From: Perna viridis
Taxonomy: Eukaryota
Reading direction: 5' to 3'
Assembly (NCBI GenBank): GCA_037379345.1
Contig: CM074517.1
Span: forward strand, 11,842,001 to 11,906,000
Length of the DNA: 64,000 nucleotides
Made by a program: the position numbers and the translations under genes. Under the pieces are notes generated by a model. It was not told the DNA's origin and searched no databases. It saw only the letters and a program-made list of their open reading frames with translations. Of the stretch, positions 38,974-41,593 are shown one piece after another. The stretch's first letter is position 1. The number at the start of each line of letters is the position of its first letter.

Positions 38974-39056
38974 CTCCGATTCACTCTCCAAGCACAGGCT
39001 AGTGCTAATGCAATCATTCTCATAAGCACAAAGCAGGTACCCGAGAAGTTTTCAAA
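38974..39056 (-). ncRNA. Candidate pri-miRNA hairpin A (duplicate of F); predicted 3p product 39007-38986
   Basis: Conserved arm CTCTCCAAGCACAGGCTAGTGCTAAT at 38984 (+). Long stem with G-U pairs on the minus strand. CNNC (CACC) at +17. Confidence 0.6.
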
Positions 39057-39106
39057 ATCTTTTCTTCTTGTCTTTCTGAACTCCTCTTCTCTTTAACGCA
39101 GTTATT

Positions 39107-39191
39107 TCCGAATCTCTCTCCAAGCACAGGCTAGTGCTAATGGTTTCATTATCTTTAGCACAAAGCAAGTACTTGGGAAGATCTCAGATTT
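39107..39191 (-). ncRNA. Candidate pri-miRNA hairpin B; predicted 3p product 39139-39118
   Basis: Same conserved arm at 39116. Basal stem UCUGAGAUC/GAUUCGGA. CNNC (CUGC) at +17. Confidence 0.6.
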
Positions 39192-39442
39192 TAATCGACT
39201 CATTTCTTCTTTCTGTCGAACCCTATAATGAAAGATCTTTTCGATTGTAATGACTTTAAAGGCTAGGTGTCAAAGTTTCATTGATGTCAAAGGTGCATCT
39301 TTTGCAATGAGTTGACAAGTTGGTAGAAGCTCAGAGACGAGGATACTATCGAAGCATTATTGGTGTCATGATTGATGAGTACGTTGTTTGGATCCCAAGC
39401 TAAATAATTGTCAGCAGAATAGGATTGCCAACACCCACAAAT

Positions 39443-40976
39443 GATAATATTAGTTCAAAATTTATATCAATTGTGAAGTCCGTGTACTCATCAATCAAAA
39501 ATGCGATTGAGATCTGGTGATACTTTATCCGATTCATTTAATAATCTGATGGGAGTTAAACAGGGTGAACCTTTATCCCCTCTTCTTTTCCTGTTCTTTA
39601 TAAATGACCTGATCGAGGATATTAACTTAAACAATCAAACTGATGTCGTAAATATCAACAGCTTTTTGATGTATTTGATTCTGTTTGCGGATGACAAAGT
39701 ACTTTTTGGAAAATCACCAGAAATTTTGCAGGAACTTTTAGATAAACTACTGATTTACTGTAATAAATGGAGTATCGAAGTTAATACTGATAAAACGAAA
39801 ATAGTAGTGTTTCGGAATGGATGGCAACCGATTGACAATAGTTTTTTTCTACAATGATAACGAAATTGAAATTGTGGATTCTTATGTATATCTAGGAATG
39901 TTGTTACATAAAAATGGGAAGTTTCAACATACACAAAAATGACTGTGTCAACAAGGATCGAGAGCGTTATCCGCAATGTGTAATTCAATCAAAGATTTAT
40001 ATTTGACTAAAAAGAAACAAGTAGAACTATTTGATATTATGGTGTCATCTGTTTTGTGTTACGCTTCGGAGATATGGGGTTTCCATCGTGGAAATGATAT
40101 TGAAATATTACATAATAAGTTTTGCCATCGTATCTTAAAAGTAGGTAGAACCACACCAAACTGTTTTCTTTACGGGGAACTAGGTCACCTTCCAATGTAT
40201 ATAATTAGACAATTTAGAGTTATGAAGTATTGGTCTAACATTCTAAAAAAGAAACAACCTATTGTATTTGACATTTATAATGTATTGTTAGAAGATGCCA
40301 ACAATGGCAAGGTAAACTGGGTTTCAAGAGTTCGTGATTTGTTGTCTAATTTGGGCTTAAATTATATCTGGTATCAACAATTTGATGTAAATTTTGATAT
40401 ACCTATAGACACTATTATTGCTAGAATTAGGGATAACTTTATACAAAACTGGTATGCATCTATAGAGAATTGTGAAAAGCTTATTATATACAAGGACTTA
40501 AAGCTAGAATTTGGTTTTGAGGATTATTTAGATGTTAGTTTTAACTCACATTTTTTGACAAGATTGAGAAGTGGTACACTGAAGTTGAACATTGAAACTG
40601 GGCGATATATTGATACTGATAGGCACATGTGTATCTGTAAATGTTGTACCATGAATTGTGTTGAAAATGAGTACCATTTTTTACTGGTTTGTCCTGCTTA
40701 TAGAATTTTTCGTACTCATAACTTACCAAAATATTATTGTTCCTGGCCAAATACAACAAAGCTTAAAACACTGTTGAAATCAACATCTGTTACTGTCATA
40801 AGGAACTTATGTAATTTTATCAAATCGGCTTGGTCAACTAGGTCACATATTGTTTCATAATTATACTTAATTGTGTATTGTTCTCTGCAATTTGTCATCA
40901 TGTCACATTGTAATATATGTTTATGTTGCTATAGCATAATTATGCTTTTTTGCAATAAAGTATTCATTCATCATTC
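39443..40976 (+). mobile_element. 5'-truncated LINE (RTE-X-like), RT C-terminal half with a frameshift and a stop
   Basis: GVKQGEPLSPLLF, LFADD, VNTDKTKIVVF, C-terminal LNIETGRY..CKCC..ENEYHFLLVCPAY. AATAAA plus (TTCA)n tail. Confidence 0.88.
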
Positions 40977-41067
40977 AATGTGAAAATATTTTGACTTTGA
41001 AATTAAAGTGAATTCAAATGAGGTAGGTTTTGCCGCCGAAACGAATTCCATCTTTTGGCGAGGATTT

Positions 41068-41150
41068 TCCTCAGCTTCTCTCCAAGCACATGGTAGTGCT
41101 AATAATCATTTCGTAATCAGCACATAACAAATACATGGAAAGACGCTGGT
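41068..41150 (-). ncRNA. Candidate pri-miRNA hairpin C (most diverged); predicted 3p product 41101-41080
   Basis: Arm CTCTCCAAGCACATGGTAGTGCTAAT at 41078 keeps predicted seed positions 2-8. CNNC (CCUC) at +17. Confidence 0.5.
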
Positions 41151-41222
41151 TGTAACGTTAAGAAACATTTGTTTTCCTTGACTTTTGAAACTTTTTTGAA
41201 TCCAGCTTTGTGTTGATTTATT

Positions 41223-41304
41223 TCCGGAACCTCTCCAAGCACAGGCTAGTGCTAATGTACTCAAATTCATTAGCCTTAGCAAGTACTCGGATAGGTCTTG
41301 GATT
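41223..41304 (-). ncRNA. Candidate pri-miRNA hairpin D; predicted 3p product 41254-41233
   Basis: Conserved arm at 41231. Basal stem UCC..GACCU/AGGUU..GGA. CNNC (CAAC) at +18. Confidence 0.6.
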
Positions 41305-41384
41305 CTTGTATAGTATCGATTCATATTGGTTTTTCTCCAAATTTTCAGCTGCAACTCTTCTCTGTTACAATAAATGATGCTGTT

Positions 41385-41468
41385 TCCGATCGACTCTCCA
41401 AGCACAGGCTAGTGCTAATAAAAACATTGTCATTAGCACAAAGCAAGTACTCGGGAAGGTATATCAGA
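41385..41468 (-). ncRNA. Candidate pri-miRNA hairpin E; predicted 3p product 41417-41396
   Basis: Conserved arm at 41394. Basal stem UCUGAU/AUCGGA. CNNC (CAUC) at +17. Confidence 0.6.
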
Positions 41469-41510
41469 TTCTTTTTAATTGTGTAATTTGCTCTTCATCA
41501 TTGGTGATAG

Positions 41511-41593
41511 CTCCGATTCACTCTCCAAGCACAGGCTAGTGCTAATGCAATCATTCTCATAAGCACAAAGCAGGTACCCGAGAAGTTTTCAAA
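41511..41593 (-). ncRNA. Candidate pri-miRNA hairpin F; predicted 3p product 41544-41523
   Basis: Conserved arm at 41521. CNNC (CACC) at +17. Confidence 0.6.

What the first reader, a model, noticed from the sequence alone, without database searches (positions are those of the whole stretch)
38974..41593. Antisense pri-miRNA-like hairpin cluster in the 3' region of a tyrosine-recombinase retrotransposon
Seen: six copies (five distinct; A duplicates F) of a ~65-nt core starting at 38984, 39116, 41078, 41231, 41394 and 41521. Adjacent units are ~130-165 nt apart and separated by unrelated sequence. On the minus strand each reads ~CUUCCCGAGUACUUGCUUUGUGCUAAU-[12-nt variable loop]-AUUAGCACUAGCCUGUGCUUGGAGAG. 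CCGAGUAC/GUGCUUGG pairs only through G-U wobbles (A-C mismatches on +), which fixes the strand. Copy-specific basal stems differ in sequence yet still pair (UCUGAU/AUCGGA in E, UCUGAGAUC/GAUUCGGA in B, GACCU/AGGUU in D), giving ~35-bp stems. The 3p arm is near-invariant while the 5p arm and loop drift. Cutting 11 nt from the basal junction predicts the 22-mer UAGCACUAGCCUGUGCUUGGAG (5' U, seed AGCACUA); the diverged copy C keeps the seed. All five distinct units have CNNC starting 17-18 nt past that cut (CACC, CUGC, CCUC, CAAC, CAUC) despite unrelated flanks. Established: a ~35-bp stem, loop of 10 nt or more and CNNC at +16-18 are animal Microprocessor determinants. Inference: the element, or its immediate 3' flank, encodes a polycistronic miRNA cluster maintained by selection, analogous to virus-encoded miRNAs. 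The seed is one base from the miR-29/285 seed AGCACCA. The product is also perfectly complementary to the element's own sense RNA, so either host-gene manipulation or self-regulation is possible.
Basis: partly seen in the sequence, partly recalled or inferred. Interest (0 to 1): 0.9.

Follow-up and report, generated by a model that had tools for sequence, protein, structure and literature searches.

The report
Mussel tandem microRNA-like hairpin array
The six hairpins are real and look like a conserved multi-copy microRNA gene of the mussel host genome, repeated in about 1-kb units, which here sits beside a broken retrotransposon and is not carried by it.

Summary
Observation confirmed. Six copies of one 22-mer lie at the stated coordinates (0 expected by chance). 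All fold into about 35-bp hairpins, and the minus strand is always the more stable one.

The microRNA reading is well supported without expression data. I found 23 distinct units from four divergent sources: the window and its near-identical SRA contigs, plus three marine metagenome contigs. In the 19-unit alignment the 22-mer is nearly invariant (4.5% non-consensus cells). The 5p arm (16%), loop (56%) and flanks (41-53%) drift. Lower stems are copy-specific but still pair. CNNC starts at +16 to +18 in 17 of 21 units, against an 8.9% background.

The transposon reading is not supported.
- The tyrosine-recombinase/SGNH element is a decayed copy cut off at 38889, in the middle of its SGNH ORF.
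- Two related elements in other mussel contigs lack the hairpins.
- Every other array lacks the element.
- SRA contigs 96-97% identical to the window show an intact 1006-bp tandem repeat (B-F-E-D-C plus spacer) with no transposon.

Unit A is therefore the F unit of the neighbouring repeat copy. The LINE fragment at 39448-40976 is a later insertion. A spacer block with a TATA-like box is conserved across sources just before the first hairpin, which suggests each repeat has its own promoter, as in miR-430-type arrays. No match turned up in Rfam or in three bivalve miRNA supplement sets.

The parts
41498..41606 (-). Hairpin unit F; predicted 3p product at 41523-41544
   Evidence: Exact 22-mer. 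Folds like A, -27.7 to -28.1 kcal/mol. The SRA version folds at -32.9, z -4.0. CNNC at +17.
41371..41479 (-). Hairpin unit E; predicted 3p product at 41396-41417
   Evidence: Exact 22-mer. MFE -36.0, z -5.6. CNNC at +17.
41208..41316 (-). Hairpin unit D; predicted 3p product at 41233-41254
   Evidence: Exact 22-mer. MFE -37.9, z -7.1. Its unique lower stem pairs better than every swapped flank. CNNC at +18.
41055..41163 (-). Hairpin unit C, diverged; predicted 3p product at 41080-41101
   Evidence: 2 mismatches in the 22-mer. MFE -35.0, z -5.0. The SRA version has only 1 mismatch and folds at -44.4. CNNC at +17.
40977..41054 (-). Part of the repeat unit after hairpin C. It includes the 30-nt stretch that recurs at 38912-38941.
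   Evidence: Continuous with the spacer in the intact SRA repeat. The 30-nt direct repeat is 100% identical.
39448..40976 (+). 5'-truncated non-LTR (LINE) reverse-transcriptase fragment, a secondary insertion into the repeat's spacer
   Evidence: Pfam RVT_1, E 1.4e-14. Absent from the intact repeat in L006-L010, where window 40977 joins directly to 39448.
39202..39447 (-). Conserved spacer block before the first hairpin. A TATA-like box lies at about 39255-39261, and TTTGACA / TTGACAC motifs lie just upstream of it on the hairpin strand. Candidate promoter.
   Evidence: Alignment A3 of window, L008, L012 and L001 shows conserved blocks and TTTAAAG / TATATAAG / TATAAAT boxes. The box lies about 70 nt before the hairpin in the window and L001, and about 117 nt in L012. 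No stable fold.
39093..39201 (-). Hairpin unit B; predicted 3p product at 39118-39139
   Evidence: Exact 22-mer. MFE -33.9, z -4.5. CNNC at +17.
38938..39100 (-). Hairpin unit A, which is the F unit of the neighbouring repeat copy; predicted 3p product at 38986-39007
   Evidence: 99% identical to 41475-41637. In the intact repeat, B is followed by F.
38891..38941 (-). Remnant of the neighbouring repeat copy (spacer end plus the 30-nt stretch), joined to unit A at a TTAA microhomology after loss of about 471 bp (its C, D and E units)
   Evidence: 94% match to L006 355-405. Read directly against L008 and window 39425-39447.
35933..38889 (+). Decayed, 3'-truncated tyrosine-recombinase retroelement (zinc-knuckle gag, RT, RNase H, YR, first half of an SGNH/GDSL ORF). 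It is a neighbour, not part of the array.
   Evidence: Stop-to-stop pieces. Weak Pfam RVT_1. tblastn collinearity with L004 and L005. SGNH alignment ends at 38889. The L004 ORF matches Lipase_GDSL_2, E 1.7e-5.

Best explanation
This is a host-genome gene array for one lineage-restricted microRNA family in a mytilid-type mussel, read from the minus strand.

The basic unit is a tandem repeat of about 1 kb. On the hairpin strand it contains a conserved spacer with a TATA-like box, then hairpins B, F, E, D and C.

Each hairpin has the geometry that the animal Microprocessor (Drosha/Pasha) and Dicer need:
- a stem of about 35 bp;
- a loop of 8-14 nt;
- a lower stem of about 11 bp below the predicted cut;
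- CNNC about 17 nt downstream of that cut.

The predicted guide is the 3p arm UAGCACUAGCCUGUGCUUGGAG (5' U, seed AGCACUA). Its 5' end sits in the weaker-paired end of the duplex, which should favour its loading.

The window holds a slightly decayed edge or fragment of the array. It has one repeat copy interrupted by a LINE fragment, plus a remnant of the next copy (unit A). That remnant abuts a truncated tyrosine-recombinase retroelement.

Shown: the sequence, the folds, the cross-source conservation pattern, the repeat structure, and the independence from the transposon. Inferred: transcription, processing, the guide arm, and a promoter in each repeat.
For: Copies and significance. Strand-specific folds: (L001 units -39 to -44 kcal/mol, z -4.7 to -9.9; L012 units -32 to -44).

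Conservation profile in 19 distinct units: 22-mer 4.5% non-consensus cells, 5p arm 16%, loop 56%, flanks 41-53% (alignments A2 and A4).

Pairing: 93.8% of cells paired, against 18-45% when partners are slid by 1-3 columns. G-U wobbles fix the strand.

Lower stems: own flanks -6.7 vs swapped flanks -3.9 kcal/mol, with 6-12 pairs beyond the 22-mer in nearly all units.

CNNC at +16 to +18: 14 of 18 units, plus all three full L012 units read, and +15 in three L002 units. Background is 8.9%.

Independent arrays with the same 22-mer: L001, L002 and L012, with repeat periods of about 1240, 112 and 807 bp.

Intact 1006-bp cyclic repeat without transposons in five SRA runs, 96-97% identical to the window.

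Conserved TATA-containing spacer. Host is a mussel.
Against: No small-RNA data, so no proof of about 22-nt products, 5' homogeneity or 2-nt overhangs.

True two-sided covariation is scarce (3 of 18 pairs), because the 3p arm hardly varies. Most support comes from one-sided changes that keep pairing.

The units are paralogues and the sources are few, so the counts are not independent events.

The L002 hairpins fold weakly (z 0 to -2).

A roughly 1-kb tandem repeat is also what a satellite looks like, and copy number is unknown.

Units A/F and C in the window are less stable than their SRA counterparts, so this particular copy may be decaying.

miRBase and MirGeneDB could not be queried.
Confidence: 0.72

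Rival explanations
1. One reading: the hairpin cluster is cargo of the tyrosine-recombinase/SGNH retrotransposon (or its immediate 3' flank). It moves with the element and acts like a virus-encoded miRNA cluster, on host genes or on the element's own RNA.
For: Physical adjacency. The element remnant ends at 38889 and the array-derived sequence begins at 38891. The hairpins are antisense to the element.
Against: The element is cut in the middle of its SGNH ORF, and the missing 125-130 residues are nowhere in the window. The junction falls inside the array's spacer, so it is a rearrangement breakpoint and not an element end. Related elements L004 and L005 have no 22-mer (up to 5 mismatches allowed) and no blastn similarity to the array. 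Eight array contigs have no RT/YR/SGNH coding sequence. The intact tandem repeat closes on itself without any element.
Confidence: 0.03
2. A satellite-type tandem repeat whose monomers happen to contain inverted repeats. The conserved 22-mer would be a DNA-level motif, such as a protein-binding box, or a source of non-miRNA small RNAs. The hairpins would not be Microprocessor substrates.
For: Tandem higher-order repeats with periods of 1006, about 1240, 807 and 112 bp. Cyclic assembly contigs imply near-identical neighbouring copies. The L002 monomers fold poorly. Bivalve genomes are known to hold old tandem-repeat families (my own knowledge, not tested here).
Against: Only the hairpin, and within it mainly one arm, is conserved between sources, while the repeat's size and make-up change. 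The opposite arm changes in ways that keep RNA pairing, including G-U pairs that would be A-C mismatches on the other strand. Unrelated lower-stem sequences still pair. CNNC stays at a fixed distance in otherwise unrelated flanks. These features only make sense at the RNA level.
Confidence: 0.15
3. Hairpins derived from a short foldback or MITE-like transposon that was amplified locally, giving at most young, neutrally evolving miRNA-like loci.
For: Each unit is an inverted repeat of about 26 nt per arm. The region is rich in transposons.
Against: There are no dispersed copies. All 6 matches in 64 kb lie in the array, and every hit elsewhere is an array too. No target-site duplications or terminal-repeat boundaries surround the units. 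The asymmetric conservation of one arm across divergent sources is not expected for neutral transposon copies.
Confidence: 0.05

Closest known systems
High-copy tandem microRNA gene arrays such as zebrafish miR-430 and Xenopus miR-427 (from my own knowledge of the literature)
   Same: Many hairpins of a single seed family sit in a higher-order tandem repeat of about 1 kb. The 3p arm is the conserved product. A conserved, TATA-containing block precedes the first hairpin of each repeat, which suggests each repeat is a transcription unit.
   Different: The seed AGCACUA is unrelated to AAGUGCU, so this is an analogue and not a homologue. Copy number, timing of expression and any role in early embryos are unknown. 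The promoter is inferred from conservation only.
miR-29 / miR-285 / miR-83 seed family (bilaterian)
   Same: The product is 3p-derived, starts right after the loop and begins UAGCAC. Six of the seven seed positions are the same.
   Different: Seed position 7 is U, not C, in 21 of the 23 distinct units; the two exceptions vary elsewhere in the seed. The rest of the 22-mer is unrelated. No Rfam family, mir-29 included, matches at E up to 10. Membership is not supported.
Polycistronic animal miRNA clusters in general (for example miR-17~92, or the primate C19MC tandem cluster embedded in repeats)
   Same: Several Microprocessor-type hairpins 130-165 nt apart on one strand. CNNC and lower-stem features are present. 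Transposons have inserted in and around the cluster.
   Different: All hairpins here are paralogues with an identical predicted product, rather than a set of different miRNAs.
   Same: A cluster of hairpins next to, and antisense to, retroelement coding sequence.
   Different: The array is not inside the element. It exists without the element, and the element's relatives exist without the array.

Membership tests
Canonical animal (Drosha/Dicer) microRNA gene | Imperfect hairpin with at least 16 paired positions between the arms, a stem of about 33-35 bp, and a more stable fold on one strand | tested here: met
   Minus-strand MFE is -28 to -44 kcal/mol and z down to -9.9. The opposite strand is always weaker. 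L002 units are weak.
Canonical animal (Drosha/Dicer) microRNA gene | Terminal loop of about 8 nt or more, and a lower stem of about 11 bp beyond the Drosha cut | tested here: met
   Loops are 8-14 nt in the MFE structures. There are 6-12 pairs beyond the 22-mer, and own flanks pair better than swapped flanks.
Canonical animal (Drosha/Dicer) microRNA gene | CNNC motif 16-18 nt downstream of the 3p cut (a determinant known from vertebrate work and reported as enriched in most bilaterians; from memory) | tested here: met
   17 of 21 distinct evaluable units; background 8.9%.
Canonical animal (Drosha/Dicer) microRNA gene | Conservation profile across taxa: mature arm most conserved, then star arm, then loop and flanks | tested here: met
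   4.5% / 16% / 56% / 41-53% non-consensus cells. The same holds with L012 and the SRA units added.
Canonical animal (Drosha/Dicer) microRNA gene | Reads of 20-26 nt from both arms with homogeneous 5' ends and 2-nt 3' overhangs; dependence on Drosha/Pasha and Dicer | not testable with these tools
MIR-29/285 family | Seed AGCACCA and a match to the family model | tested here: not met
   The seed is AGCACUA. No Rfam hit at E up to 10.
Transposon-borne miRNA cluster (cargo of the YR/SGNH retroelement) | The array lies within the element's boundaries | tested here: not met
   Element homology ends at 38889, in the middle of the SGNH ORF. The next base onward is array spacer.
Transposon-borne miRNA cluster (cargo of the YR/SGNH retroelement) | Other copies or relatives of the element carry the array, and arrays elsewhere are linked to the element | tested here: not met
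   L004 and L005 lack it. L001, L002, L006-L010 and L012 lack RT/YR/SGNH. Only 45-60% identical relatives could be fetched, not copies of the same family.
DIRS/Ngaro-type tyrosine-recombinase retrotransposon (the neighbouring element) | RT, RNase H and a tyrosine recombinase with the H-x-x-R ... Y end, in one orientation | tested here: met
   Pieces at 36100-38597 are collinear with L004 and L005. Pfam support is weak. The copy has stops and frameshifts.
DIRS/Ngaro-type tyrosine-recombinase retrotransposon (the neighbouring element) | Characteristic terminal or split direct repeats | tested here: inconclusive
   No repeats of 30 nt or more were found around the L004 relative. The window copy lacks its 3' end.
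miR-430/427-type tandem miRNA gene array | Higher-order tandem repeat carrying several hairpins of one seed family | tested here: met
   1006-bp cyclic contigs with five hairpins. L001 has about 1240 bp with six, L012 has 807 bp with three, and L002 has 112 bp with one.
miR-430/427-type tandem miRNA gene array | A promoter in every repeat; a burst of expression at zygotic genome activation | tested here: inconclusive
   A conserved spacer block with a TATA-like box precedes the first hairpin. Transcription start and timing cannot be tested here.

The most novel reading that the evidence does not exclude
The locus belongs to a bivalve counterpart of the miR-430/miR-427 type of array. That would be a high-copy tandem array in which every ~1-kb repeat is a self-contained, TATA-driven pri-miRNA gene for one lineage-specific seed (AGCACUA). 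It would be conserved across several bivalve taxa and undescribed in miRNA catalogues, possibly serving a burst-expression role such as clearing maternal mRNA in embryos.
Probability: 0.15. Interest if true: 0.6.

Novelty: new member of a known kind. Interest (0 to 1): 0.38.

Why it matters
If small-RNA data confirm it, this adds a lineage-restricted microRNA family to the sparse catalogue for bivalves. Its gene architecture, a promoter-bearing tandem repeat with 1-6 identical-product hairpins per unit, is so far best known from vertebrate early-embryo miRNAs.

It would also give a clean example of how such arrays are remodelled between taxa and eroded at their edges by transposon insertion and deletion.

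The more striking claim, that a retrotransposon carries its own miRNA cluster, does not hold. The case is a reminder that adjacency to a transposon remnant in one window does not show ownership.

Tried and rejected
1. Rfam 15 with permissive thresholds over 38000-42500 gave only two sub-threshold chance hits, snoR72 and U6atac.
2. Exact-pattern scans of genome contigs and viral contigs found nothing.
3. A full-text search for the 22-mer or a 13-mer found nothing. Supplements of three bivalve miRNA papers (PMC7773633, PMC4793324, PMC7488030) hold no match, and PMC11067994 has no supplement held. This is not proof of novelty, because miRBase and MirGeneDB could not be queried.
4. Synteny through the neighbouring fucosyltransferase gene failed. 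The M. edulis homologue shares only the exon at 74% identity and has no array within 10 kb.
5. An exact-protein look-up of the LINE ORF2 found nothing, and P0130 was not on record.
6. A word-index protein search with a spurious array ORF found only L001 itself. The exhaustive HMMER search with another spurious ORF did work, but its hit P0140 is a bacterial protein and was discarded.
7. I first read the 30-nt direct repeat (38912-38941 / 40977-41006) as a target-site duplication, and then proposed a 10-nt duplication for the LINE. Both ideas were dropped once the intact repeat showed the 30-mer is ordinary repeat sequence and the LINE insert spans 39448-40976 with at most a 3-nt duplication.
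8. Coding potential of the array or spacer was rejected, because there are stops in all frames and the only ORFs are short and spurious.
9. The conserved spacer was tested as another hairpin and shows no stable fold.
10. The comparison of window and SRA copies by region has too few differences to be informative.
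Full report
**1. The observation**

Five copies are exact and one has two mismatches. Dinucleotide-preserving shuffles give none. The 65-nt cores, their spacings and the 99% identity of A (38938-39100) to F (41475-41637) are as described.

Every distinct unit folds into a single long hairpin on the minus strand, at -27.7 to -37.9 kcal/mol. The z-score is -4.5 to -7.1 for B-E and -1.5 for A/F. The plus strand is always weaker. G-U and U-G pairs at two stem positions in most units explain this and fix the strand.

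**2. Related arrays elsewhere**

One exact-pattern scan of metagenome contigs returned two contigs. L001 has nine units in 1.7 kb. L002 has five units in a 112-bp tandem repeat.

No DNA search of animal genomes was available, so I used an indirect route. I searched the protein library with a spurious 99-aa ORF that runs across units C-E. That led to two further sources:
- L012, a TARA metagenome scaffold with four units;
- L006-L010, five SRA-derived contigs that are 96-97% identical to the window.

Together with the window this gives 23 distinct units from four divergent sources, not counting the near-identical SRA copies of the window's own units.

The host is a mytilid-type mussel. The neighbouring fucosyltransferase gene has Mytilus edulis as its best named hit (80% amino-acid identity). 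An SRA contig matches window 48388-52372 at 99.05%.

**3. Evidence for selection on an RNA hairpin with one functional arm**

In the 19-unit alignment A2, the share of non-consensus cells differs sharply by region. Adding L012 and the SRA units does not change the picture.

| Region | Non-consensus cells |
|---|---|
| 22-mer (3p arm) | 4.5% |
| Opposite (5p) arm | 16% |
| Loop | 56% |
| Flanks | 41-53% |

- **Pairing.** For an 18-pair consensus structure, 93.8% of cells are paired. Sliding the partners by 1-3 columns gives 18-45%. Most variation is one-sided and keeps pairing, such as G-U to A-U. Only three pairs change on both sides, as expected when one arm is frozen.
- **Lower stem.** Below the predicted cut the sequences differ between units yet still pair, with 6-12 pairs beyond the 22-mer. 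Own flanks give -6.7 kcal/mol against -3.9 for flanks swapped between units. The units with unique flanks (D, C, L001:703, most of L002) beat every swap.
- **CNNC.** It starts at +16 to +18 in 14 of 18 units and in all three full L012 units (read). It starts at +15 in three L002 units. The background is 8.9%, and the motif hardly occurs elsewhere in the 30 nt downstream.
- **Fold quality.** L001 and L012 hairpins are excellent (-32 to -44 kcal/mol, z to -9.9). L002 hairpins are weak.

These are the structural hallmarks of canonical animal miRNA precursors. Expression could not be tested.

**4. Structure of the locus**

The SRA contigs L006-L009 are cyclic: a 30-nt prefix equals the suffix, giving a period of 1006 bp. 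They are rotations of one another. On the hairpin strand they read F-E-D-C, then the stretch containing the 30-mer, then a spacer, then B, then F again. In window terms, 41637 down to 40977 joins directly to 39448 down to 39101, and then returns to 41637.

The array is therefore a higher-order tandem repeat with five hairpins per unit. Read against that reference, the window on its + strand contains:

| Window coordinates | Content |
|---|---|
| 38891-38941 | Remnant of one repeat copy (spacer end plus the 30-mer) |
| Junction at TTAA | That remnant joins unit A across a deletion of about 471 bp (the copy's C, D and E units) |
| 38938-39100 | Unit A, which is that copy's F unit |
| 39101-39447 | B and the spacer of the next repeat copy |
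| 39448-40976 | LINE reverse-transcriptase fragment, absent from the intact repeat |
| 40977-41637 | The 30-mer stretch, then C, D, E, F |
| 41638 onward | Homology to the repeat stops |

The window's C and F units fold less well than their SRA counterparts: -35.0 vs -44.4 and about -28 vs -32.9 kcal/mol. This copy therefore looks like a somewhat decayed edge or fragment of the array.

The other sources have different repeat make-ups around the same 22-mer: about 1240 bp with six hairpins, 807 bp with three, and 112 bp with one.

**5. A candidate promoter**

The spacer just before the first hairpin of each repeat is conserved between the window, L008, L012 and L001, although the rest of the spacer is not. 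It contains a TTTGACA motif and a TTGACAC motif close together, followed by a TATA-like box (TTTAAAG, TATATAAG or TATAAAT). The box lies about 70 nt before the hairpin in the window and L001, and about 117 nt before it in L012. The spacer has no stable fold and no open frame.

I infer that each repeat is its own transcription unit. Pol II is the likelier polymerase, because the hairpin loops contain T-runs that would stop Pol III. This is inference only.

**6. The transposon question**

Upstream, on the + strand, lies a decayed tyrosine-recombinase retroelement with these parts:
- zinc-knuckle gag at 35933-36061;
- RT at 36100-37162;
- RNase H and recombinase to 38597, ending in the H-x-x-R ... 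Y motif;
- the start of an SGNH-like ORF from 38644.

A relative in a Mytilus edulis contig (L004) has the same order. Its complete 270-residue ORF matches the GDSL lipase family (E 1.7e-5, below Pfam's cut-off).

The window's alignment to that ORF stops at residue ~141, at window position 38889, and the rest is nowhere in the window. Array spacer sequence begins at 38891. The junction is therefore a breakpoint between a truncated element and a truncated repeat copy.

L004 and L005 carry no hairpin (up to 5 mismatches allowed) within 8 kb and have no similarity to the array. None of the eight array contigs encodes RT, YR or SGNH.

**7. Comparison with known systems, and novelty**

No Rfam family matches at E up to 10. 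The 22-mer was not found in the full-text library or in three bivalve miRNA supplement sets. miRBase and MirGeneDB could not be searched, so the family can only be called unrecorded in what I could check.

The seed differs from miR-29/285 at one position, and nothing else aligns, so membership in that family is not supported.

In architecture the closest analogues are the tandem miR-430 and miR-427 arrays (my own knowledge). The seed is unrelated to theirs.

I rate this a new member of a known kind, of moderate interest. The high-interest claim of a transposon-encoded cluster is rejected.

**8. Limits**

- The units are paralogues from few sources, so the counts overstate the number of independent events.
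- The taxa behind L001, L002 and L012 are unknown.
- Copy number is unknown.
- The satellite-repeat rival (15%) is excluded only by RNA-level arguments, not by expression data.
No contig looked human, and the window contains no N.

Noticed in passing
window 33495-33729: A dense cluster of the palindromic motif GTTGGGCCAACGTTGG and variants. It folds strongly on both strands (-42 and -44 kcal/mol per 90 nt). Isolated copies recur near 34290-34310. It looks like transposon subterminal repeats.
   Followed up: no
window 34660-34800: Tandem and inverted repeats of about 22 nt (CACAAAATTCAATTTTGTGAGA-like) forming hairpins of about -32 kcal/mol. Probably part of another mobile element.
   Followed up: no
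window 35405-35534: A near-perfect 20-bp inverted repeat (MFE -43 kcal/mol) about 400 bp upstream of the retroelement's zinc-knuckle gag piece. It could belong to the element's 5' region.
   Followed up: no
window 23535-26258 (-): An intact 907-aa ORF with an nSTAND3 NTPase domain followed by many ankyrin repeats. This is a type of putative innate-immunity gene that is expanded in marine invertebrates.
   Followed up: partly
window 44623-48072 (+), with 42280-43349 (+): An apparently intact 1149-aa LINE ORF2 (endonuclease, RT, zf-RVT). Upstream ORFs include a Baculo_FP_2nd match and may be its ORF1. A long T-run lies at about 48140-48170. The array's homology ends at 41637/41638, about 640 bp before these ORFs. 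No target-site duplication was found.
   Followed up: partly
window 50078-50977 (+): A single-exon alpha-1,2-fucosyltransferase gene (Glyco_transf_11). It is 99% identical to an SRA contig and 80% to a Mytilus edulis protein. It was used to place the host among mussels.
   Followed up: yes
window 40983-41089 (-): A weak U6atac-like match (18.3 bits against a gathering score of 33; E 0.22). It overlaps the 3' flank of hairpin C and I took it as chance.
   Followed up: no
L008 615-625; L012 648-658; window about 41030-41040 (-): After the last hairpin of the repeat, the intact SRA copy reads AAG|GTACGT and L012 reads AAG|GTAAGT, both 5'-splice-site-like. The window's copy has three changes there (AAACCTACCT). 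The primary transcript may be spliced, and this copy may have lost the site. Untested.
   Followed up: no
L002 1-1740: The 112-bp hairpin repeat array ends abruptly at about 1740. It is followed by AT-rich sequence with no coding sequence and no similarity to the window. The source organism is unknown.
   Followed up: no
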